Below, piece after piece: positions 39,615 through 62,047 of a stretch of DNA of 64,000 nucleotides (positions within the stretch are counted from its first letter, which is position 1; each line of letters begins with the position of its first letter). Both the position numbers and the translations under genes were made by a program. Origin of the DNA: Penicillus capitatus (taxonomy: Eukaryota; Plantae; Chlorophyta); contig OZ287710.1 in NCBI GenBank assembly GCA_965649825.1, forward strand, positions 124,001 through 188,000, given 5' to 3'. A model generated the notes under the pieces. It did no database searches. It saw only the letters and a program-made list of their open reading frames with translations, and was not told the origin of the DNA.

Positions 39615-40016
39615 CCCGCGGCAAAGAGTCCACTCTTCACGGATCAATGTTTGTAATGAACAATGTGAACATGTCAAACGACGTTAAGACCACATGATAA
39701 TTCAATGAGGAAACCCATCGTCACCATATCAGGCGACGTATCCGCACGGACCTAAGAAGAGCGAGGGGACTGTGAAGTTCTAGATAACAATGCGCTTGCT
39801 GTACGTCGTCTTTTTATTGGCCAAGCTGTGATGGATGGAATGCCACTCCGTCGCGGAATAGCGTCCCTGTAAGAGCGAATTGGTATTCAATTATTCTCCC
39901 GCCGTGTTCGCTTGCAAAGTTTCACAATATTCGTTGAAAAGTTAGCGAATCTTACAAAGGTGTTGTCGTTCGAACGCATTTCTTTGCGTTTCCATAGGGT
40001 GACATGCGGAGAGTGT

Positions 40017-40631
40017 TCACACACCACCGCAGACTTTGCCACCACCTTGCCGAGAAAGCAGCCCTGCGCAATTCTCGCTATCTTCGTCCCACAGCCAAGC
40101 AGCACATCCTCCATAGACGTTACTATCGACTACACAGACACTTCGCCACGTGTCCTTCAAAAGTGATGGTTACTGTTGCGGCATGTTAGCTCGCATTCTT
40201 GTTCAGAATCGACCAACCCGAGGGCAACCGCCTTGATTTCGCAGCCATCGCTGTCTGCTTCGGACCCCACCGCTTCGTACACGGTCTCCACGAAGTTGTT
40301 CAGAATGGTGCCGTTGATGCCGCCACAGTGTGTATAGTCATCAGAGTATCTGGTCGTTTCAATGATATAGCCATGACAGGCTTCTTTCTGCGGACTTAAT
40401 TCCCACGCAACACAGCGCTGACGTTTCCTTACGTCTGCAAAAAAGATAAGCATATATGTGTTCCGTTTTGCAGATGGGCTGCGGCGACGTACAGTTGGTA
40501 CATTGTTCGGCACACTCGTTGGAGAACAGTGTTTTTTGGATAAAGGTGCGGCGGTAATCACATTCGGCTTGACAGACTCCAAGGCACGTCACTGCCACGA
40601 AGATAATCGTCGCGAACCAAGAGAGATGCAT
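40017..40631 (-). CDS. Secreted Cys-rich protein A1, two PAN/Apple-like modules
   Basis: Signal peptide MHLSWFATIIFVAVTCLGVCQA; 12 Cys as 2x(C..CxxxC..CxAW..CxG..C); two phase-1 introns (58 and 44 nt). Confidence 0.85.
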
Positions 40632-41017
40632 TGTCAACAAAACAGACTGGTAATATCTTCCAGGGGGTCGGCTTTAATAACGAGCAGTGGGATAGGGAGA
40701 AGTCAAAAGCCACGCTGCCATTGGCGCGACAGCTGGCAAGCAGCTACGCTTTTGCAATAAACGCACTCGGACGGCAAGGAATTTTGAATGAAAAATTGAT
40801 AAAACGCTGAGCTGTACACCACTTCGCGACTTCAGCGCAAGTACTTCGTCGCGAATTTCAGCGTCAACCTCCGCGTCTTGCCCTAACTTGACACGAATAT
40901 CACTGCTGGCTCATTTGTCGGCAGCTAGACGCCGCGTGCTGCAGGCAGCATAAGAGACTGTCTTTTGCCTGAACCTCAGTTATTGTCTTCTCGCTTTGAG
41001 TGCTATCCTTCACAAGA

Positions 41018-41688
41018 ATGAAGTGGTTTCCGACTCGGTTATTTATCGCGTGCTTGACTATCGGCGTCGCCTCGGCGCACATCGTCTGCAAATATCAACG
41101 CATCAGTCTTGGTATAACAAAGACGTCCGCGGAGTGCCAGACAAAGTGCATCGCATGTAGACACACTCTTATTCCAGTCAGTCTCGTCGAAACAAAACGT
41201 TTGCGTGTTGTAGTCGATACTGATGACCCAGAAACGACACGGGATTGCATTGCATGGGGTCATAGCTTAAAAAATGAGAAATGTACTGGATGGATACTGG
41301 AGAACGACCCAGAAAGGTACAGCGATTTCTACGGTGTTGGCTCATACTCCGACGGCTATTACGACGACTACGAAACATGCGTCCTGGTGGCGCACACAAA
41401 CATCAGCGTCGCTCATACGAAGGGCGCCGACAACAAGAGCGGGTGTTTTTTCGAAATGGAAAACTTGGGTTACGCAGAAACACCTGAAGACTGTCAGCCA
41501 CTGTGTGAAGGACGTGAGAGCTCTCGAGTGAATTGGACACTCTATCTGAAAGTTTTGGTTTTGTTGTTTCAGTGACTAGTCAGCGTCATGGAGGTTGTCT
41601 TGCGTGGACGCATTCAGAGGACGAAGAGGCATGCCGAGGCCTCTTGTCCATGCCGACCAACCAGTACACTTCTTGTGGTCGTGCCTAG
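41018..41688 (+). CDS. Secreted Cys-rich protein B1, two PAN/Apple-like modules, Tyr/Asp-rich loop
   Basis: Signal MKWFPTRLFIACLTIGVASA; ECQTKC..CIAW..C; DCQPLC..GGCLAW..CRGLL..C; same two intron positions as A1. Confidence 0.87.
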
Positions 41689-42159
41689 ACGCTGTACGCA
41701 GTGGAACACTGCAACGTCTGTAAACAACAAAGAAATGCCGAAAATCCTGCATCGTGTGTGCGCGTGACTATCAGCCGACGGCGAACGAACAGTCTGCAAT
41801 TGGACAACCCACGTTTAACAGAACACAGAGGGAACACACAGCGCCATTCCCAGCTGTGTTTGACTAGGGAAGGCATTGAACCAAATGTCGAACGCAGCAT
41901 TGGGAAAACAGATGGCGTCTGTTGTGACTGACGTGAGATATACGTGGACGAAGAGAAACAGCCGCATTCATGCAGCAGTCGTTATCGCAAACGAAAGCAA
42001 CGGCGAATTCGAACCATTCTGCTGAAGTTCATTTGAAGGACAGTACGTACATCAACCACGCGGCACGGTCGAATCTTCTATTGTCTGAGTCGAGGTTGCT
42101 GTGATACTCGAAGGACATCGGTCGACACGTTTACGCATAAAAACACTCGGTCATACACC

Positions 42160-42846
42160 ATGAAAAATATGACGGGGGTGCTTCTCGTGCTGTCCACATG
42201 CATGATTTTCTCCACTGCACATAACGCTTGCGAATTCCAACGTGTGACATTGGGTCCCGGCAACTCTACCGATTCTTGCCATTTTCTGTGTATCAACTGT
42301 TCGTGTTTTCCTCGCTGTTGTACAAGTTCGATGGACCTCGTGGTCAGATGACGCCGACGAAGAGGAATCGACCCGTCACTGCATTGCATGGGGGTACGAT
42401 GGAGTGAGTCGCGTTTGTCGCGGTTGGCTGCTGGAGACAGAGCCAGATGACATCGACTATTTCTACGATCAGAAGTACTGGTATTACGAGGGCGGGATTT
42501 ACGACCCTACGGACACAGTTTTCGACACATGTGACCTCGCGCCTCACACTAATCTCAGTGTTGCTCACACAAGAGGAGCCAGAGATAAAGAGGGGTGTTT
42601 CTTCAAATTTGTTCATTTGGGTTATGCCAAGACTCCAGATGACTGTCGGCGTTTTTGCGAAGGCCGTGCGTTATTTCTTAACTGTCATCGTCTCTTTTAT
42701 GACGTGGTGTTTTCATTTGTGTTTTTGCAGTCGTCAGCAAGATACATGGAGGATGCCTTGCATGGAGTCACTCAGAAGAAGATCTGAAATGCGCAGGATT
42801 GTTATCCAAGCCGTCAAACAAGTACACCTCATGCGGACGCGTTTAG
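42160..42846 (+). CDS. Secreted Cys-rich protein C, third paralogue type of the same family
   Basis: Signal MKNMTGVLLVLSTCMIFSTA; CHFLC..CIAW..CRGWLL; HTNLSVAHTRGA..GCFF..LGYAKTPDDCRRFC..GGCLAW..CAGLL..SCG. Confidence 0.85.
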
Positions 42847-44345: not shown

Positions 44346-46968
44346 CTAAATTACGATACGTAAAAAGACACCGTCGCTGTAAATAGTGTTGTGTACAATA
44401 CAACATTGGCATCTGTTCAGAAATGATTGTGCATCTATTGCAAAAAAAGCTGCATCCTCTGTAGTCTTGAACGCTTTGTAGAGGAAACTGTACAGTTCAT
44501 CTGCATTTCTCTTGTCGTCCATTACCTTAGCTAATTCTGCCAATGGTCTTTTCGACAAATCACGCAGTGATTGACATGATTCTATCAATCTTCTGCAACT
44601 TTCTGTCACCCTTGGCATTTTTCTAGATGCATGACAAAAGTACCTGCCAATGATTAGCCACAACAAGTATATAGGACAGAAAACCACACCTGAGATTCTC
44701 GATGGTTTCATTATTACTCTCTTCGACTGTTGATCTTTTGTCTCGTCTCTCGACTACCAAAGGATCCGGCTCGGTAAAATTCCTCTTTAGATGTCTGAAA
44801 GTATGGCATGTTGCTTCTTCATTCTCCGACCAAACCAACCTACAAAATCGAGAAGACCCCGTTAGTCCATTGAGCACTGAGTGTCATCGTAGCTAAAGAA
44901 CCTTAGGGAGGAAAAACGAAGAGCGAGGAGAACGAGTGAGATGATGCATTTTGGAGACATCTCCTTATTGAACATAGGGTGGCTTGGATGATGAAACTGC
45001 CTCCCTTCGGACTCGATCAACAAGATGGAGATCTTGAATCTCTTGCACATGGCTACCATTTGATTGTCTAACCTTCCAGAATTGATGGATGCCTTCAAAT
45101 CTGGAAGGGTTTTTCTTTCTACTGCCATGTCTGTCGTTAGGATATAATCTCCCACCTGCCATATAATCTGTGTCACTGCTACTTGTAAATGTCTTACCTT
45201 GAGTTTGGACATTTGAAGATGGAATTTTGCCTTGTGAAGGCTTAACGGGAGGTGTGCTACCAATTCCCGGACGTCCACCACAATCGTTGATCTTTGTCCG
45301 TTGCCCTCATCTGGCATGATCTCTCTGTGTCCCGTTTGGACAGAAGTTGATCGTCTTCTGCGAGAGAGTTCTCTTGTCTCTTCGCTATCATCCTTGGTCT
45401 TGGCGATGTGCGAAAACACATCTCTCTCTTTCCCAATGACCCCCGCAAACGTCATCTTCTCGACAGAATTGTCGTAGTAGATGACATAACGCTTGATGAG
45501 GTTCTCCTTATTCTCCGCCTATATTCAGCTAGATGCATAATATAGCTACAAAGGTTCGTGATACCTGATAGATTTCGACTTGACTGTAGAAAGCAACGTC
45601 TGCATTATAGAAAATGACGTAGTTCGGCTGAAGTTTCCAGAGAATTAAGGAATCCGCCCCATCCAATGAATAGAAATGTACATTATGAAGTAAATTTCTC
45701 TGGCGGTCCTCCACAGATGTCTCATCTTCTCTACTTCTCACCTTCCTGCATGCAAATCGTTCGTTTAATGTTTCAAGTCAAGACTTTTCAACGAACAAGG
45801 AGGAATCCCACTTCAACGCAACGCGTTGTTTCTTCTTGCATCTTTCGTCGCCATTCTGCTCTCTTGTCCGGCGAAGGAATTCATCAAACATGTTCTTCAG
45901 TGTTCTGCCTGGATCTGCAGCAAACACAATCGCCTATTCATCCACTTTCCGCCAACATACACTAGACGTTACCTTCAACGACCCCTTGTAGCTGATTCTT
46001 GATGGACATCTCTCGATGGACCACCAAGATGGATTTCTCTGTTTCAGTGCCTTCGTCAAATGATTCCATGATCTCTTGTTGAATGTCGGAAAGCAGCTTG
46101 TGTAATGCTCCCCATTTGGGTGGAGGCTCCAATACTGGGCACAGATTAGCAGATTTGCCTAGAAACTACACGGTAAAACCCATCACTAAATGCTGTAGAG
46201 CTACCTTCGGCGACACACTCTTTCGTTCTTTTCTTTCTGTTGTCTTTCAGATTAGCACAACCCTTCGTCTTTGAAATTAAGGACAAAGACCAGTCCCTTT
46301 GCCAGTTTGAAGGTATCGTGCAGCATCCATTTTGACCGTACCCGACTGAACTTGGTCATCTCCAACTGATGGAGAAATTCAACGAGATCTAGCGATAAGA
46401 GCACCAGAAACAGTCTGTGCAACTTCTCCATGTCTGAGACTATGTTAATTGCATCCAGTCGGTCGGTTGCCATGATAGAATTTGACAAAGATTTCATCTG
46501 TCTTTCAATAATCCCCTTGGAGATTTCCAGAAGACAATTCTCCACCGCTAGACCAGAACTATGCACACACTCCCACTCGTATTTGTCCGAATGAAAACAA
46601 TCTTGGTACCAATCAATAGTGTCCGTTTGTTTGAGCTCATCCACCAGGTCCATCATAAGATCTGTGATGGCTGTTTGAATTTCCCACACGGTAAGTGTCT
46701 CTTTGTCGATTTCGACAGGACCACCTCGTTCTGCGGAGGTTAGCTGTCCAGCACTTGAGATCGCACGACCAACTGTCCTTCCGATTCTGCTACAAGTATT
46801 GCGTCGTCCGTCGGCGATTGAGCACTGCGTCGTCCGACGGCGATTGAGCACTGCGTCGTCTTCTCTTCAGAAATATCGTACGTCTTGGACACGGGACAGT
46901 TTCCGAGAAATAGATGACGATGACGGTACGGGCGCCGGCTCCTCGTTCGTTGCGGTGCTTTCTTCCAT
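44346..46968 (-). pseudogene. XPF: XPF/ERCC4/Rad1 endonuclease copy, N-terminally truncated with one apparent frameshift
   Basis: IQTAITDLM..ELK, VLEPPPKW, PNYVIFYNAD..QVEIY, VDVRE, GDYILTTDMAVERKTLPDL, LRLVWS..FRHLK..EPD, HhH-like tail. Frame break at ~46255-46263; first ~200 aa of XPF absent. Confidence 0.8.
46800..46860. repeat. 26-bp tandem repeat, ~2.3 copies
   Basis: tgcgtcgtccg(tc/ac)ggcgattgagcac repeated directly with no spacers; it spans a predicted splice acceptor of the XPF copy. Confidence 0.9.
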
Positions 46969-48771
46969 CCGTGTCCGATTGAACGCTTGGGTGACCGAGC
47001 GGTCTTCGCCGGCGTCGCCGGCGTTCTTACACAACTCACACCACGATATATTCTCCCTCTGTCAGTTCTCCTCTTCTCCGAGAACCCTTCTGCAGTCGAT
47101 CGACATCACGAGTCGTCGTAGCTTTCTTGCCTCTCGTATCATCCCTGATCCTCCTTCCAAGGTCTGTCATCCCACACAAGATCAGAGATGATACTTAGTT
47201 GTAGGTCAGTAATCTCTTGTTTGAACCTGCTTTTCGGTCGGCGTACATCGAACAGCGGAACAAGGTAAAAAGGGTCGAATTCAAAATGGGATGTACAATT
47301 TAATGTGCATATCGTCTATGAATGTCTACGAAATACGTCGAGAAGCCGGCAGCAATCGTAAATGCATCCCTACCTTCACTCAATCAGAGAAACGAAAAGC
47401 GGGATGATATGAATGTTTGGCGCAGTGGTATGAATTTGTATTTGGTGGAATGGCACATGCGCCGGTAAAGCGCGGAGTATAATGGATGTCTATGAATCCG
47501 TCCGTAATGTTAAGTACTACTTCTCTCCTCTATAGATGAATGTCAATTCGGACAGCAGTCTTCTCATCCGTTACGCTTGTCTGTTGCAACGAACAAGAAA
47601 GCTAAATAACATTAAACGCCAATCATTTGTCTTGCTCTCATTGTACAACAAATACGAGTTCCAAAAACAGCTCCATGCCAGAACTGATCTGTTTTGTCCC
47701 GTTCCGTCTCGTAACGGAAATCTCATTCTGAGAGATACAACGCATGTCCGTGAGCGTCAAGGACAGGCCTCATCAGATATGTCCAGCAAACGATTTCACT
47801 GGAATGCGACATCATGAGGAGAGAGAAGTGATCTGAAGATTCTACTTGTTTGAATTGCGGCCGTGGGTCAATCTTCCTTTGACTGTGTGCGAAGAACGCC
47901 ATCTTTAATGATCCCAGATTGGGTTCAATAGCCTCCTCGATGCTTCTGCTGTTATCTGGGTCGAAAAACGGCGCATGGTGATTTTCGGCCTCAGCTCATA
48001 GGTCAGGAGTCGTCTCACGGATATCGGATCCATGAATTCCGGATCTTGTGGATACGTGGATGACGTTTGTCAGACTACTTGTCACACATGACTCAGTAAA
48101 CCACACATTACATTCTTTTTAGTGCTTAGAAAAGTGGAAGAGTCGACAATAAGTACGTATGAATTCCAACATTGGATTCCTGGAAACTTAGCTGTCTTCG
48201 GGATTCAACATCTTTCCTCCACAACCCCAGTTTCTCGACTTGTTTGGATCAAAATCGGATATCTTCATTTTAAATCAATTCGTCCAGAAGCTACTTTATG
48301 AAGAGAGGGGAAGGCTATTTAACAAGCGTGACAGCAGTGGTCGTTCGTCATTGTCCGAATCAATCTGAACACGCAGAAGAAAAGTGAATCAAAAAACAAC
48401 GATCGACGAAACCCAGTCTGCCATAGAGGAGCATCTGTCAATAATACCACGCGATGAGTCTTGTCTCCGAACTGGCAAATGGGTATCAGCATGTTCACGA
48501 TTACAACTTTCTTTGAATATGAGAAGAAAGACAGAAATCAGATGGATAGATAGATGGAGAGCGCTCAGAATACACTATTTCACCTCGACGCCATGTCGCG
48601 CTCTCGCGGTAAGAAGACACCTGAACGCAAACGATGTTACAGATTGAGGATCTCAAACAAGGTCATCGTCCCTATTTTTACTGATGATATCACAGTGAAA
48701 GCAAGTAATTCATTGCGTTGACCTTATCATACATTTCTTCGAATTTCCATTGGGTGACATGCGGAGAGTGT

Positions 48772-49386
48772 TCACACACCACCACAGACTTTGCCACCAC
48801 CTTGCCGAGAAAGCAGCCCTGCGCAATTCTCGCTATCTTCGTCCCACAGCCAAGCGGCACATCCTCCATAGACGTTACTATCGACTACACAGACACTTCG
48901 CCACATGTCCTTCAAAAGTGATGGTTACTGTTGCGGCACGTTAGCTCGCATTCTTGTTCAGAATCGACCAACCCGAGGGCAACTGCCTTGATTTCGCAGC
49001 CATCGCTGTCTGCTTCGGACCCTGCCCCTTTGTACACGGTCTCCACGAAGTTGTTCGGAATGGTGCCGTTGATGCCGCCGCAGTGTGTATAATCGTCATA
49101 TGGGGGTATACCATCAATGATATAGCCATAACAGGCTTCCTTTTGCGGACTTAATTCCCACGCAACGCATCGCTGATGTCTCCTTACATCTACAAAAAAG
49201 ATAAGCGTATATGTGTTCCGTTTTGCAGATGGGCTACGGCGACGTACAGTTGGTACATTGTTCGGAACACTCGCTGGAGAACAGTGTTTTTTGGATAAAG
49301 GTGCGACGGTAGTTACATTCGGCTTGGCAGACTCCAAGGCACGTTACTGCCACGAAGATAATCGTCGCGAACCAAGAGAGATGCAT
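48772..49386 (-). CDS. Secreted Cys-rich protein A2 (paralogue of A1)
   Basis: Intact frame and introns as in A1; clustered changes ETTRYSDDY to DGIPPYDDY and YEAVG to YKGAG. Confidence 0.85.
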
Positions 49387-49774
49387 TGTCAACAAAACAG
49401 ACTGGTAATATCTTCAACAGGGTGGTTGGCTTTAATAACGAGCAGTGGGATAGGGAGAAGTCAAAAGCCACGCTGCCATTGGCGCGACAGCTGACAAGCA
49501 GCTACGCTTTTGCAATAAACGCACTCGGACGGCAAGGAATTCTGAACGAAAAATTGATAAAACGCTGAGCTGTACACCGCTTTAGCGACTTCCGCGTACA
49601 TACACAGCCCGAATTCACCATCAGCATCCGCGTCTTGTCCTAACTTGACACGAATATCACTGCTGGCTCATTTGTCGGCAGCTAGACGCCGCGTGCTGCA
49701 GGCAGCATAAGAGACTGTCTTTTGCCTGAACCTCAGTTATTGTCTTCTCGCTTTGAGTGCTATCCTTCACAAGA

Positions 49775-50498
49775 ATGAAGTGGTTTCCGACTCGGTTATT
49801 TATCGCGTGCTTGACTATCGGCGTCGCCTCGGCGCACATCGTCTGCAAATACCAACGCGTCAGTCTTGGTATAACAAAGACGTCTGCTGAGTGCCAGACA
49901 AAGTGCATCGCATGTAGACACACTCTTATTCCAGTCGGTCTCCTTGAAACAAAACGTTTGCGTGTTGTAGTCGATGCGGATGACCCAGAAACGACACGGG
50001 ATTGCATTGCATGGGGTCATAGCTTAAAAAATGAGAAATGCAGCGGATGGATACTGGAGAACGATCCAGAGGTTTACGCTGCTGACGACGATTACGACTC
50101 ATTCTACGGCGATATTTACGGCTTAGCCTACGACAGCTTGTACAGTGTCGGTTCATACTCCGACAGCTATTACGGCGACTATGAAACATGCGCCCTGGTA
50201 CCACACACAAACATCAGCGTCGCTCATACAAAGGGCGCCGGCGACAAGAGCGGGTGCTTCTTCGACGTCGAAAACTTGGGTTACGCAGTAACACCTGAAG
50301 ACTGTAAGGCCATGTGTGAAGGAAGTAAGACATCTAGAGTGAAATGGACGATCTTTCTGAAACCCTTCTTTTGTTGTTTCAGTGACGAGTCAGCGTCATG
50401 GAGGTTGTCTTGCGTGGACGCATTCAGAGGACGAAGAGGCATGCCGAGGCCTCTTGTCCATGCCGACCAACCAGTACACTTCTTGTGGTCGTGCCTAG
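49775..50498 (+). CDS. Secreted Cys-rich protein B2 (paralogue of B1, expanded Tyr loop)
   Basis: As B1, but the loop is VYAADDDYDSFYGDIYGLAYDSLYSVGSYSDSYYGDYET (+18 aa). Confidence 0.87.
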
Positions 50499-51021
50499 AC
50501 GCTGTACGCAGTGGAACACTGCAACGTCTGTAAACAACAAAGAAATGCCGAAAATCCTGCATCGTGTGTGCGCGTGACTATCAGCCGACGGCGAACGAAC
50601 AGTCTGCAATTGGACGCAACCCACGTTTAACAGAACACAGAGGGAACACACAGCGCCATTCCCAGCTGTGTTTGACTAGGGAAGGCATTGAACCAAATGT
50701 CGAACGCAGCGTTGGGAAAACAGATGGCGTCTGTTGTGACTGACGTGAGATATACGTGGACGAAGAGAAACAGCCGCATTCATGCAGCAGTCGTTATCGC
50801 AAACGAAAGCAACGGCGAATTCGAACCATTCTGCTGAAGTTCATTCAAAGTACAGTACGTGCAGAACGGTAGCTTGTCCGCCTATGTCGTCGCGGAATTT
50901 AGATAAGCATTAAGACGCATCAACGTCATGCCTGCGTTGCTGTGAGTTACGTGCCATTCATTAAGTCGAATTGACTATTAGCGAGCGATACGCCTGTCCT
51001 GTCGAACGGGTTTTCTACACA

Positions 51022-53961: not shown

Positions 53962-54567
53962 TCCGTAGCATCAAGCGAATGCCCAAAGAAGCAAGTTTGC
54001 CCATTCTCCCAGTGGACTTCACTTAATAAAGAGCAGAATCTTTCTGCCAAGCTGGACAACAAGAGCATAACGAGATCACACTTCGTATGTTTTTTAGTGA
54101 TAATCGATGTCAAACTCCGCTGTTAAATGAATTAGAGCAATCGATCCTTGAACGGTTAGTTGCTTTATAGCATCTCGTGGATGGGCAGATTAGAGATCCT
54201 GATGATGATTCTTGAATGTCCATCTTTGGTTAAAAGCTGAGCAAAATGAGAGGGCCTACTAAAAATGAAGGAAGGAAGGCCCTTTTGTATTAAATTTGTT
54301 CGAAGTGAAATTGGCAGCGAATTGTATCTGCTCGACATGAAACTGTCTCTTGTGTGTTTGACTGACTTTATGTCACGCCGCGTCTAAACTTCAGCCGCCG
54401 CGATACATCAAACGGTCAAAGGTCACATCACACGCGTCTCATGTTTCCTCGTCGATCGACAAGGCATCATCACCAGCTGACTTCAAAGAGTGATCCGTTC
54501 AAACACGAGATGCACATGTCACATCACGTATGGTCATTCGTCTCCTGCGTTTTTTGAGGTTTTGGTC

Positions 54568-55049
54568 ATGCGAACGAGTCGCCTTCCCTCGCGGCTGACG
54601 GACAGCGCACGGTTCTGCTTATCTCGGCGACCGGTCCCTGTCACGTGTCCCCGTTTCCGGAGCGTTGGGCCAAGGCATCGGGAACGCATTTTCAGGAAAC
54701 GAACGCTCTTCATCACCTATACCTATCCTGAACCCGAAACGGAAAAAGAGAGATCACCTCTCGATTATCCACAGGCACGTGTCGTCTCCTTACACATCGA
54801 GGCGCTCTGACAACGTCCTCTGTTTAGGAATGGGTGACGCCAGAGCCAAGTCGCCGACCCGACATCTTCCCGGAATTTGAGAAACTCGAAACCCCATTGC
54901 CCAAACCGCTCCCCGGAGATCCAGAGCAGCCAGATGAAGAAGAAGAGATCGAAAAAGACAAAGAGAAGCCGAAGCCTGAACCGGAAGAGGATCCAGAGAA
55001 AGATCCCGAAAAAGAAACGGAGGAGGAACCTGAACTCCCGGACGCTTGA
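54568..55049 (+). CDS. Small plastid-targeted Pro/Glu-rich protein
   Basis: Transit-like MRTSRLPSRL...; a GC-AG intron (54775-54827) joins ERSPLDYPQ to EWVTPEPSRRPDIFPEFEKLETPLPKPLPGDPE plus an acidic tail. It recalls a conserved plant chloroplast protein that I cannot name reliably. Confidence 0.75.
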
Positions 55050-60141: not shown

Positions 60142-62047
60142 TCAACAGATCACTTCGATCATTTGCAACGGAGTGTCTTCGAGGCCAACGATGTTCATAC
60201 CCTCTTGACGAAGCTGAGTGAGTTTCTGTAGGAGAGAAGGCGTTATGCGTTCTCCTGGAACGATCAGAGGTATCCCTGGTGGATACGTCGTGATCATGAC
60301 CCCACAAATCCTCCCCAGACTGTCTTCCAATGCAACGCTATACCATCCGTCTGCAGAATGAGGGACTTCGATGCAGACGCACTTTTCTGTTTGGGAAGCT
60401 ATCGCCTGAGATGGCGTCAGGTGCATAGGAGGGATGATCACATCGTGTGGTTCGGGCTGATGGGATGGATGTGAATGATGGATGTGACGTTCTGCAAAGA
60501 CCATGTCTTCAAGCGTCACAAGGCAGAAGAATCACCCGAAATCTTCTGCATGGCATGGATGAGACGTTCGGCATCCTCCGTGACAGAACCTGGTCCAAAG
60601 ATGAAGACGATGACCTTCAGGGCAGCAGTGTCACGCGTGAGATGCAGAGGCGGTGACACACATCTGTGGTGGTCATTTCTGCGACAATGCCAAATTCAGT
60701 ATCGAGTTTTGCTGCCGCGGTGGGCGCATCGATGTTCCAGTTCAGTAGACGGATAGCAATGCGAAGGGGATCGAATGTCAAGACTGTGTCCCTGACAGGA
60801 CTGTCCGATACCAAAGAGATGCTTTCAATGTCCCTGAGTTTCTTCGTTGCTAGCTAAACGCAAGGAAGCTGGCGAAATGAAGAAAGAACAGGCGAAGCAC
60901 CCACCTGCGCGGCCTGCACTGCCTCCTCGAATGTCCCGTTCTCTGTTGCGTGGAGGGCAGCTGCCTCGAGTGAAGCCATCAGAAGATAACTGGGACTCGA
61001 TGACTATGGCAAGCATGTTTTTGGGTGTCTGTATCGTGTATCTTTACCTGAAGGATTCTCAGCCATTTCGAGATGCTGTGAGCGGAGATGTGATCCGAAC
61101 GGATGTGCAGCATGGAGGATTGCGTCAACGATGTCAAGACTTTGTGTGTGGACTGTATGACGACGTCGGCTCCACAGGAAAGAGCATCTGGTGGAAAAGC
61201 AGAATGGAATTTGAAGTGGGCTCCGTGTGCGTCATCTACGATCAGAGGAACGCCAAAATCATGACAGACATCCGCAACCCCTATACAGAACATCTGAGAA
61301 TCGAGACAACGATTGTATCAGTCATGTGCCCTTAACGTCTGAGACAGCACCAAAGTAGGTCGGGGATACAATGAAGACCGCTCCGATATGCTCTTTTTGA
61401 TCTCTGAGTGCACAGAGTCGTCTACGCACGTCCATAGGGTCCACTCTATGACAGATGCCGTTCGAAGGATCAAACTCAGGAATCAAGTATTCGGGTCGGC
61501 ATCCTGTATCGTATAGCTCTCACACAACCGTTTTGCAAACGTGGATACAATGCCTGCCAGCTGTAGCGCATGATAGGCGGATTGGTGAGCATTGCGAGCC
61601 ATCAGACAGATGGATCCAGGTGGACAGAGGCCGAGAAAGGATGCATGAATGCCCACAGTTGTGCCGTTGATGAGATAGAATGATACATCGGCACCAAAAA
61701 TCTCCGCCGCCATTTTCTGAGATGCCGCCAAGACATCTCTCGGACAGGCGAGATTATCCAGACCTGATCAGAACTTCATCAGCCGACAGCAATTGGCAAT
61801 GGCATGCCTTCCAGTTCGGTGTAGTCCAGCTTCAGGGCAGCTTCGCCTAGCAGCCGCCGGAAACTTTCAAGTACAGAACGGCCCATCTACAGCAGATCAG
61901 CCAGCAACCACCATCTGGCAGTTGTCGCCCTGCCTGAAGACAGACTTTATGTCCAGGAACGTGAAGGGACACATTTCTATGTCGTTTTACTCTTTGCTGC
62001 AGAGCTCTTAGCAATGGCCCCTGTTGGCTGCACAAATGCAAGGACAT
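60142..62047 (-). CDS. Bacterial-type (fold-type I PLP) Orn/Lys/Arg decarboxylase
   Basis: SLHVPGHK, DYTELE|GLDNL, FYLINGTT, RNAHQS, VDDAHGAH, GADVVIQSTHK (PLP Lys), FDPLRI, ITTYPPGIPLIVPGERI. Confidence 0.93.

What the first reader, a model, noticed from the sequence alone, without database searches (positions are those of the whole stretch)
50050..50210. Hypervariable Tyr/Asp-rich loop with period-4 tyrosines between Cys5 and Cys6 of module 1
Seen: the loop is 16 aa in A1/A2, 31 in B1, 37 in C and 49 in B2. B2 gained 54 nt built from ~12-nt units giving YDSF-YGDI-YGLA-YDSL-YSVG. A1 vs A2 also differ most here (ETTRYS vs DGIPPY), while the Cys scaffold is fixed. Inference: an antibody-CDR-like variable surface. 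Tyr flanked by Asp/Glu also suits tyrosine sulfation, DOPA/dityrosine cross-linking (adhesive) or Ca2+/mineral binding.
Basis: partly seen in the sequence, partly recalled or inferred. Interest (0 to 1): 0.75.

Follow-up and report, generated by a model that had tools for sequence, protein, structure and literature searches.

The report
Expandable tyrosine-acid loop in algal secreted proteins
The flagged stretch is a real tyrosine- and aspartate-rich loop in a small secreted, cysteine-stapled protein family of a probable siphonous green alga; the loop changes length now and then, but its sequence is conserved rather than antibody-like hypervariable.

Summary
The facts hold. Five paralogues (A1, B1, C, A2, B2) encode ~170-200 aa secreted proteins with 12 invariant cysteines in two homologous modules. 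The Cys5-Cys6 loop of module 1 is 16 aa in A1/A2, 31 in B1, 37 in C and 49 in B2. B2 carries a derived 54-nt in-frame insertion.

The "hypervariable, CDR-like" reading is not supported.
- Loop dN/dS is always below 1 (0.07-0.63).
- In B and C orthologues it is no higher than in the flanks.
- Across species at ~50% identity the loop is as conserved as the scaffold, with fixed aromatic and acidic columns.
- Loop lengths are identical in a second strain.
- The 12-nt units are not detectable as DNA repeats. Only the tyrosine spacing is periodic (p≈0.004; 0.02-0.06 after correcting for lag).

What is real is recurrent in-frame expansion of this one loop. A relative has an independent 66-nt duplication, and a distant homologue has a 248-aa loop. 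The A loop also evolves faster than its flanks.

Homologues occur in Caulerpa lentillifera, and the modules are PAN/apple-like only below threshold. AlphaFold2 on a homologue gives strand-helix-hairpin modules and a low-confidence coil loop.

Function is inferred, not shown. A conserved acidic-aromatic binding or adhesion surface is most likely; tyrosine modification is open.

The parts
49775..50498 (+). Gene B2, a secreted two-module Cys-rich protein of 202 aa. Exons are 49775-49913, 49971-50324 and 50383-50498. Intron 1 is 49914-49970 (57 nt, in frame). Intron 2 is 50325-50382.
   Evidence: Splice model. The intron positions are shared with A and C, and intron-less or spliced homologues confirm the exon joins (P0063, Caulerpa proteins).
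50042..50188 (+). B2 Cys5-Cys6 loop, 49 aa: SGWILENDPEVYAADDDYDSFYGDIYGLAYDSLYSVGSYSDSYYGDYET. It has 10 Tyr, 12 Asp/Glu and no Lys/Arg. Cys5 is at 50039-50041 and Cys6 at 50189-50191.
50072..50128 (+). Derived in-frame insertion in B2. These 57 nt replace one codon of B1, a net gain of 54 nt, and encode VYAADDDYDSFYGDIYGLA.
   Evidence: DNA alignment with B1 and three orthologues and the offset shift. No significant DNA similarity to the rest of the loop.
41018..41688 (+). Gene B1 (184 aa). Intron 1 is 41157-41213 and intron 2 is 41514-41572. The loop is 41285-41377 (31 aa), which is the ancestral B length.
42160..42846 (+). Gene C (190 aa). Intron 1 is 42299-42347 (49 nt) and intron 2 is 42666-42730. 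The loop is 42419-42529 (37 aa).
   Evidence: The loop is under strong purifying selection, omega 0.07.
40017..40631 (-). Gene A1 (170 aa). The introns are 40435-40492 and 40130-40173. The loop is 40328-40375 (16 aa, HGYIIETTRYSDDYTH).
48772..49386 (-). Gene A2 (170 aa). The loop is 49083-49130 (16 aa, YGYIIDGIPPYDDYTH). The diverged patch at 49092-49112 is unique in the window.
39960..42040 (.). Copy 1 of a ~2.1-kb segmental duplication that carries the divergently transcribed A-B gene pair. Copy 2 is 48715-50850.
   Evidence: Identity is a mosaic of 95-100% stretches with troughs at the A loop, at the shared promoter, and from the B loop to intron 2.
48715..50850 (.). Copy 2 of the segmental duplication (A2-B2). 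B exon 3 plus the 3'UTR (50369-50810) is 98-100% identical to copy 1, which marks a recent gene-conversion tract.
   Evidence: Strain L003 keeps a diverged B2 exon 3.

Best explanation
The flagged stretch is the Cys5-Cys6 excursion of the first of two homologous, disulfide-stapled strand-helix-hairpin modules (PAN/apple-like). It sits in a lineage-restricted family of small secreted proteins, found here and in Caulerpa lentillifera, so the host is probably a siphonous green alga.

Shown:
- The loop carries a conserved acidic-aromatic motif: W-[ILV]-L-[ED]-x-[DE]-P-[DE]-x-Y-x-D-(Y)-F-Y-[GD]-x-G-x-Y...Y-[DE]-x-x-Y-x-[DE]-[YF]-[DE]-T-C.
- The motif is under purifying selection in B and C.
- This one loop tolerates occasional in-frame expansions that keep the Tyr/Asp/Gly/Ser composition. 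B2's extra 18 residues are one such derived expansion, already fixed in two strains.
- Gene conversion homogenises the flanks of the duplicated A-B pairs but has not erased the paralogue-specific loops.

Inferred:
- The insertions arise by internal duplication. This is shown only for one relative.
- The loop is a flexible, strongly anionic, tyrosine-studded binding or adhesion surface presented by the scaffold, and its length sets reach or valency.
- Whether the tyrosines are sulfated or oxidatively cross-linked is open.
For: - Gene models and 12 invariant Cys in 17 genes from four loci.
- N-terminal hydrophobic leaders ending VASA|H, CQA|E and STA|H, read directly from the sequences.
- Sub-threshold PAN_1/PAN_4 hits in 7 of 11 members, best E=8e-4.
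- Exon 1 (C1-C3) aligns onto C7-C9 of module 2, so the two modules are an internal repeat.
- AlphaFold2 on homologue P0063: pLDDT 71, pTM 0.66, each module strand-helix-strand-strand. Loop residues 71-95 are coil with block pLDDT of 42-57.
- Loop omega is 0.07 (C), 0.14 (B orthologues) and 0.24 (B1-B2).
- Loop identity across species is at least that of the scaffold, with conserved aromatic and acidic columns.
- An independent 66-nt insertion at another position of the same loop in L2B resembles the adjacent loop DNA, p=0.007.
- P0071 has a 248-aa D/S/Y-rich loop with repeated YYxxFYN and GYDY motifs.
- Conversion mosaic of the duplicated segment.
- Caulerpa membership of the family.
Against: - No function was tested, so a binding role is inference from composition and constraint.
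- PAN membership is below the curated thresholds, and Foldseek found no PDB match at E<=1e-3.
- The A-type loop does evolve faster than its flanks, so not all loops are equally constrained.
- One Caulerpa paralogue (P0065) has a Ser-rich loop that is not Tyr-rich, so the motif is not universal.
- The duplication origin of the B2 insert is not demonstrable at the DNA level.
- The dN/dS estimates rest on 16-49 codons per pair and are noisy.
- Low pLDDT from a 14-row alignment is weak evidence for disorder.
Confidence: 0.5

Rival explanations
1. The tyrosines are substrates for oxidative cross-linking (di- or isodityrosine, DOPA). These proteins would then be structural components of a cell wall, wound plug or spore/gamete coat, and loop length would set the number of cross-link sites.
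For: - Tyr makes up 16-28% of B/C-type loops, embedded in Gly/Ser/Asp.
- The proteins are secreted and disulfide-rich.
- In coccidian oocyst walls, PAN-domain proteins and Tyr-rich proteins thought to be peroxidase cross-linked are both abundant (PMC3261165). This is an analogy only.
- Siphonous algae rely on rapid wound plugging (PMC7554865; general knowledge).
Against: - Bulk cross-linking substrates should tolerate residue changes as long as Tyr content is kept. Here whole columns, including acidic, Pro, Gly and Thr positions, are conserved, and omega is 0.07-0.14.
- There is no evidence of peroxidase partners or of wall localisation.
Confidence: 0.2
2. The loop is a cluster of tyrosine O-sulfation sites. 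The result would be a highly anionic sulfotyrosine patch for electrostatic protein-protein or protein-polysaccharide recognition, as in PSGL-1, GPIb-alpha or chemokine-receptor N-termini.
For: - Most loop tyrosines have Asp/Glu within two residues, with almost no Lys/Arg and many Gly/Ser/Pro. This matches the known preference of tyrosylprotein sulfotransferases (general knowledge).
- A Caulerpa sulfotransferase (g1631.t1) was modelled on protein-tyrosine sulfotransferase 2 (PMC7554865).
Against: - No sulfotransferase was identified in this organism.
- The motif rules are loose.
- Disulfide-proximal tyrosines (Y-E-T-C) are poor sulfation sites (general knowledge).
- This rival is compatible with the main explanation rather than exclusive of it.
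Confidence: 0.12
3. The segment is a functionally neutral, compositionally biased linker between two modules. Its indels are tolerated slippage products, and its apparent conservation is only compositional.
For: - The loop has low pLDDT and no secondary structure.
- Indels of 54, 66 and roughly 650 nt are tolerated.
- One paralogue has a Ser-rich version.
Against: - dS in the loop is 0.5-1.05 while dN is 0.03-0.15.
- Position-specific conservation extends to 50%-identity homologues.
- C-type loop length and sequence are nearly unchanged between species.
- Cys6 closes the loop back onto module 1, and C1 and C6 are lost together in P0064. The segment is therefore a loop within the module, not a free linker.
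Confidence: 0.1
4. The loops are under diversifying selection as a variable recognition surface.
For: - The A loop has dN 3-12 times the flanks, and A1/A2 carry a sharply localised divergent island that has resisted gene conversion.
- Loop length differs between B paralogues in both species examined.
- The Tyr/Ser/Gly/Asp composition resembles antibody paratopes (general knowledge).
Against: - Omega is below 1 in every comparison.
- In paralogue pairs dS is raised along with dN (1.10 and 0.72 against 0.17), which points to escape from conversion or a clustered mutation event rather than selection on amino-acid change.
- B and C loops are not faster than their flanks.
- There is no length polymorphism between the two strains, and only about 4 non-synonymous loop differences across five genes.
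Confidence: 0.08

Closest known systems
PAN/apple domains (Pfam PF00024 PAN_1, PF14295 PAN_4; HGF N domain, plasminogen PAp, factor XI apple, apicomplexan MIC4/MIC5, oomycete CBEL)
   Same: - Six-Cys module with spacing C-x12-15-C-x3-C-x10-13-C-x-[AG]-[WY]-x9-11-C...C.
- A helix carries the CxxxC pair and is followed by a beta-hairpin.
- The proteins are secreted and the modules are tandem.
- Weak PAN_1/PAN_4 hits, and the HGF N domain appears among weak Foldseek hits.
   Different: - Scores are below Pfam gathering thresholds, and there is no significant PDB match by sequence or fold.
- The Cys5-Cys6 segment carries a conserved Tyr/acid-rich insertion that expands to 31-248 aa. I know of no such feature described for PAN/apple modules.
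Tyrosine-rich wall proteins of coccidian oocysts (Eimeria GAM56/GAM82, Toxoplasma Tyr-rich proteins), which co-occur with PAN-domain wall proteins
   Same: Both are secreted, Tyr-rich segments in an extracellular, disulfide-rich context. In the oocyst wall, PAN-domain and Tyr-rich components occur together (PMC3261165).
   Different: - There the Tyr-rich and PAN parts are separate proteins in an unrelated lineage.
- No sequence homology was found.
- Cross-linking is untested here.
Acidic sulfotyrosine motifs (PSGL-1, GPIb-alpha, CCR5 N-terminus, hirudin)
   Same: Clusters of Tyr flanked by Asp/Glu with few basic residues, in a flexible extracellular segment.
   Different: This is a resemblance in composition only. 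No modification or enzyme has been shown in this organism.
Low-complexity insertions in surface loops that grow by slippage or internal duplication
   Same: In-frame, composition-preserving length changes are confined to one loop. A duplication origin is shown for the L2B insert.
   Different: - The core of this loop is position-specifically conserved.
- The B2 insert is no longer recognisable as a DNA repeat.

Membership tests
PAN/apple domain | Match to the PAN_1 or PAN_4 profile at or above the curated gathering score | tested here: not met
   B2 scores 15.9 bits against a cut-off of 21.4. Across 11 members, 7 hit PAN_1 and 7 hit PAN_4, with best E-values of 8e-4 (PAN_1) and 7.8e-4 (PAN_4). 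None of the hits whose scores were listed reaches its cut-off.
PAN/apple domain | Conserved Cys framework: core C2-C5 and C3-C4, plus the apple-type C1-C6 bond | tested here: inconclusive
   Six Cys per module have PAN-like spacing and are invariant in 17 genes. C1 and C6 are lost together in P0064, as expected for a C1-C6 pair. Disulfide connectivity itself cannot be tested here.
PAN/apple domain | Fold: a helix packed on a beta-sheet hairpin, similar to solved PAN modules | tested here: inconclusive
   The AlphaFold2 model of P0063 has strand-helix-strand-strand in each module. Foldseek against PDB gives no match at E<=1e-3. HGF N-domain entries (7mob_A, 4iua_H, 3hms) appear only at E of about 1-2.
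Hypervariable (diversifying-selection) binding loops, CDR-like | dN/dS above 1, or clearly above the flanks, in the loop | tested here: not met
   Loop omega is 0.07-0.63. B orthologues give 0.14 against 0.24, and C orthologues 0.07 against 0.28. Only A is raised (0.31-0.63 against 0.15-0.22) and it stays below 1.
Hypervariable (diversifying-selection) binding loops, CDR-like | Polymorphism of loop length or sequence between strains | tested here: not met
   Window against L003: all five loop lengths are identical. There are 1+1+0+2+0 non-synonymous loop differences, which is not in excess of the flanks. Only two strains were available.
Coding tandem repeat (mini- or microsatellite) | Detectable head-to-tail DNA repeat units | tested here: not met
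   TRF at minimum score 30 finds nothing in 50042-50188. Lag-12 identity gives p=0.22, and non-Tyr codons p=0.87.
Tyrosine-sulfated proteins | Sulfotyrosine on the protein and a TPST in the organism | not testable with these tools
   Only composition fits. A sulfotransferase modelled on protein-tyrosine sulfotransferase 2 is reported for Caulerpa (PMC7554865).
Dityrosine/DOPA cross-linked wall or adhesive proteins | Cross-linked or hydroxylated Tyr, and wall or adhesive localisation | not testable with these tools
   There are no data here. The only link is the analogy to oocyst walls.

The most novel reading that the evidence does not exclude
A family of secreted two-module PAN-like proteins, so far seen only in Bryopsidales-type green algae, carries a conserved and expandable acidic-tyrosine motif. 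That motif is post-translationally modified (sulfated or peroxidase-cross-linked) and acts in the rapid extracellular assembly that giant coenocytic cells depend on, such as the wound plug, wall or gamete coat. Paralogue-specific loop length would tune valency.
Probability: 0.15. Interest if true: 0.6.

Novelty: new variant of a known kind. Interest (0 to 1): 0.35.

Why it matters
The result defines an unannotated, lineage-restricted family of small secreted disulfide-rich proteins. Only about 20 sequences turned up in searches of 5.8 billion non-redundant proteins (15 billion before clustering), and none has a Pfam assignment above threshold. One structurally defined loop in this family has expanded repeatedly, from 15 to 248 residues, while keeping a conserved Tyr/acid motif.

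If the host is a siphonous green alga, these proteins are candidates for extracellular adhesion, wall or wound-plug biology in giant single cells, where few protein players are known.

There is also a methodological lesson. Length differences and a Tyr-rich composition mimicked CDR-like hypervariability. Rate tests and cross-species comparison showed constraint instead.

Tried and rejected
1. AlphaFold2 on the only window-derived form the tool accepted (unspliced B2, lacking exon 3) gave pLDDT 29 and was discarded.
2. A profile search against PDB sequences gave only a chance scorpion-toxin hit, E=0.12.
3. Foldseek of the P0063 model against PDB gave no significant match. The top hits were ferredoxin-like ABM/ACT dimers at TM of about 0.3, treated as non-specific.
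4. TRF and lag-12 tests for a DNA tandem repeat were negative.
5. A search for a donor of the A2 loop patch elsewhere in the window found none.
6. Rfam and tRNA scans of the window, run to help identify the organism, found nothing.
7. The eIF3c search for taxonomy gave closest named hits of only 38% identity (Picocystis, land plants), so the organism was not identified directly.
8. C was first considered a frameshifted pseudogene. This was rejected because a 49-nt intron at the same site and phase as in A restores the frame and is conserved in L1C and L3C.
9. The 57-nt in-frame segment of B was considered as coding sequence. This was rejected because it diverges with non-triplet indels between species, and spliced or intron-less homologues lack it.
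10. The literature search found no description of PAN-like proteins in Bryopsidales.

Full report
**Context.** The window is eukaryotic: GC is about 49% and the family's introns are 44-65 nt. The finding lies in gene B2. tblastn with the five spliced proteins shows that the window holds exactly five members of one family:
- A1 (minus strand, ATG at 40631)
- B1 (plus strand, ATG at 41018)
- C (plus strand, ATG at 42160)
- A2 (minus strand, ATG at 49386)
- B2 (plus strand, ATG at 49775)

A1-B1 and A2-B2 are divergently transcribed pairs inside a ~2.1-kb segmental duplication, 39960-42040 against 48715-50850. Neighbouring genes are ordinary eukaryotic housekeeping genes: ERCC4, BRO1/ALIX, F-box LRR, signal peptide peptidase, Pumilio, eIF3c and a phage-type (single-subunit) RNA polymerase.

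**Gene models.**
- All members have three exons.
- Intron 1 sits at the same codon and phase in A (57-58 nt), C (49 nt) and B (54-57 nt).
- In B, intron 1 is in frame and free of stop codons, so it is invisible to ORF reading. Prokaryote-style gene calls read straight through it (P0001-P0004).
- I treat this B segment as an intron for two reasons. It diverges between species with non-triplet indels while the flanking exons are conserved. Spliced or intron-less homologues also join the exons exactly as modelled: P0063 has 'CQTKCIEFNATATVDCIAWGH', and the Caulerpa proteins agree.
- With this model, 17 genes from the window and three related loci are intact and share 12 invariant cysteines.
- Each protein has a hydrophobic N-terminal leader with a small-x-small cleavage motif, read directly from the sequence.
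- The mature part is two homologous six-Cys modules. Exon 1 (C1-C3) aligns onto C7-C9 of module 2.

**Checking the observation.**
The B2 loop is window 50042-50188.
- The duplication offset jumps from 8757 to 8811 nt at the loop, which is +54 nt in B2.
- In the DNA alignment, B1, the same-strain-level copy L3B1 and the related-species copies L1B and L2Bb all lack these bases. More distant B-like homologues have 32-33 aa loops. The 49-aa state is therefore derived, a true gain.
- The peptide YDSF-YGDI-YGLA-YDSL-YSVG is present.
- Tyrosine spacing of four residues occurs six times, with a run of five. This is rare in shuffles of the loop (p=0.004), but only p=0.02-0.06 once any lag from 2 to 7 is allowed.
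- At the DNA level there is no repeat. TRF finds nothing. Lag-12 identity is not significant (p=0.22). Non-Tyr codons show no lag-12 similarity (p=0.87). The insert does not resemble the remaining loop DNA beyond chance (p=0.30-0.45).
- At the motif level the insert does contain a second copy of the conserved Y-x-D-F-Y-G unit. An old internal duplication is therefore plausible but unproven.
- A1 and A2 do differ most in the loop. Identity falls to 72% in a 60-nt island within a 92-98% background. Non-synonymous differences are 12-fold enriched there (p=4e-6).

**Is the loop hypervariable?** I compared paralogues, a strain-level relative (L003, from another metagenome assembly) and a related species (L001 and L002). 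The eIF3c orthologue in that assembly, on the L001 contig, is 88% identical. Nei-Gojobori estimates by region give the following.

| Comparison | Loop omega | Flank omega |
|---|---|---|
| C orthologues | 0.07 | 0.28 |
| B orthologues | 0.14 | 0.24 |
| B1-B2 | 0.24 | 0.27 |
| A1-A2 | 0.31 | 0.18 |
| A orthologues | 0.42-0.63 | 0.15-0.19 |

- No comparison approaches 1.
- Loop dN exceeds flank dN significantly only in A and in the within-genome paralogue pairs. In those pairs loop dS is raised as well (1.10 and 0.72 against 0.17).
- Raised dS together with dN is the signature of flanks homogenised by gene conversion around an unconverted island. It is not the signature of selection for amino-acid change.
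- Ongoing conversion is visible directly. B exon 3 plus the 3'UTR is 98-100% identical between the two window copies, whereas strain L003 retains a diverged B2 exon 3 resembling the other species.
- Between the two strains all five loop lengths are the same, and loop substitutions are not in excess.
- Across species at about 50% identity, loop identity (45-58%) equals scaffold identity (42-54%). For P0063 against P0073 the loop is the better conserved part (84% against 71%). Aromatic columns, acidic columns, a Pro, a Gly and the final Thr are all fixed.

The B/C-type loop is therefore a conserved acidic-aromatic motif, not a hypervariable region.

**What does vary.** Length varies, episodically, and always in this loop.
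- L2B in the related species has an independent 66-nt insertion at a different position. Its DNA significantly resembles the adjacent loop segment (p=0.007), so it is an internal duplication.
- A profile search of 1.84 billion representative proteins found 13 proteins at E<=1e-3.
- Family loops range from 15-18 aa (A-like proteins and several Caulerpa paralogues) through 30-53 aa to 248 aa in P0071.
- P0071's loop is D/S/Y-rich, with three 'YYxxFYN' and two 'GYDY' motifs.
- The equivalent loop of module 2 is a constant 12-13 aa.

**Family and host.**
- Only about 20 sequences were recovered from searches of 5.8 billion non-redundant proteins (clustered from about 15 billion) and 1.84 billion representatives.
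- The named ones are four Caulerpa lentillifera proteins: g2250, g2251, g2252 and g4781. Three of these are adjacent genes.
- Together with eIF3c's nearest named relatives being green algae and plants at 38% identity, this suggests the window comes from a siphonous (bryopsidalean) or related green alga. That is an inference, not a demonstration.

**Fold.**
- Pfam gives only sub-threshold PAN_1/PAN_4 matches to module 2, in 7 of 11 members with best E=8e-4.
- A family profile finds nothing in PDB sequences.
- AlphaFold2 on P0063, a B-like homologue with a 32-aa Tyr/Asp loop, used a 14-row alignment and gave pLDDT 71 and pTM 0.66.
- In that model each module is strand-helix-strand-strand. The loop (residues 71-95) is coil, with block pLDDT of 42-57. 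A short strand carries Cys6.
- Foldseek against PDB has no match at E<=1e-3. HGF N-domain (PAN) entries appear only at E of about 1-2.
- P0064 has lost C1 and C6 together, as expected if they form the apple-type N-to-C disulfide.
- I therefore call the modules PAN/apple-like and leave membership inconclusive.

**Mechanism.**
- Shown: a secreted, disulfide-stapled two-module scaffold; a loop with a conserved acidic-aromatic core under purifying selection; recurrent in-frame, composition-preserving expansions; and gene conversion of the flanks that has not erased paralogue-specific loops.
- Inferred: the insertions arise by internal duplication or slippage, shown for L2B only.
- Inferred: the loop is a flexible, strongly anionic, tyrosine-studded recognition or adhesion surface. 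B2's loop has 12 acidic residues, no basic residues and 10 Tyr. Its length would set reach or valency.
- Position-specific constraint on non-Tyr columns favours specific binding over bulk cross-linking or a neutral linker.
- Sulfation and oxidative cross-linking remain open. The composition fits both. The literature adds two facts: PAN-domain and Tyr-rich proteins co-occur in coccidian oocyst walls (PMC3261165), and a Caulerpa sulfotransferase was modelled on protein-tyrosine sulfotransferase 2 (PMC7554865).

**Verdict.** The sequence facts are right. The '12-nt unit' and 'hypervariable/CDR-like' readings are not supported. The interesting residue is a small, undescribed green-algal family of PAN-like secreted proteins whose Cys5-Cys6 loop is a conserved Tyr/acid motif prone to occasional expansion. 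Interest is moderate (0.35), and I rate it a new variant of a known kind.

Noticed in passing
window 41559-42000 vs 50369-50810: B exon 3 plus the 3'UTR is 98-100% identical between the two copies, while the preceding ~300 nt are only 78-90% identical. Strain L003 keeps a diverged B2 exon 3. This is a recent gene-conversion tract private to the window strain.
   Followed up: partly
window 41157-41213 and 49914-49970: Intron 1 of B1 and B2 is 57 nt, in frame and free of stop codons, so ORF-based gene callers read through it. P0001-P0004 in the public collection carry these 18-19 spurious residues.
   Followed up: yes
window 40795-40854 vs 49553-49611: A second divergence trough (67-77% identity, with small indels) lies in the shared A-B bidirectional promoter region of the duplicated segment.
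   Followed up: no
window 46800-46860: A 26-nt unit is repeated 2.3 times at 97% match (TRF score 115). It lies between the two family clusters and overlaps the 5' end of a 199-aa ORF that has no Pfam hit.
   Followed up: no
L002 11368-11564: Truncated, frameshifted remnant of a C-type gene (CTG in place of ATG) next to the long-loop B copy of the related species.
   Followed up: partly
L001 2890-7439: An LTR-retrotransposon-like element (gag-aspartic protease, reverse transcriptase, integrase) lies just upstream of the A-B-C cluster in the related species. Reverse-transcriptase fragments also separate the two A-B pairs in L002.
   Followed up: no
P0064 (Logan contig), protein level: This homologue has lost Cys1 (now Trp) and Cys6 (now Gly) together and keeps the other module-1 cysteines. 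That is consistent with a C1-C6 disulfide.
   Followed up: partly
P0071 (Logan contig), protein level: This homologue has a 248-aa Cys5-Cys6 loop rich in Asp, Ser, Glu, Gly and Tyr, with three 'YYxxFYN' and two 'GYDY' motifs. It is the extreme of loop expansion in the family.
   Followed up: partly
L004 135-677 and 1043-1333: An intron-less B-like gene (P0063) is followed by a homologue of window ORF 54490-54810 ('PEPETEKERSPLDYPQ'). This suggests conserved linkage in a more compact genome, or a transcript-derived contig.
   Followed up: no
window 60142-61731 (minus strand): ORF fragments of an Orn/Lys/Arg decarboxylase (OKR_DC_1, C-terminal domain), interrupted by introns, in this eukaryotic window.
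   Followed up: no
window B and C 'HTN[IL]S' after Cys6; A 'INGT'; C 'NST' in module 1: N-glycosylation sequons lie immediately after Cys6 in all three paralogue classes, so the base of the loop is probably glycosylated.
   Followed up: no
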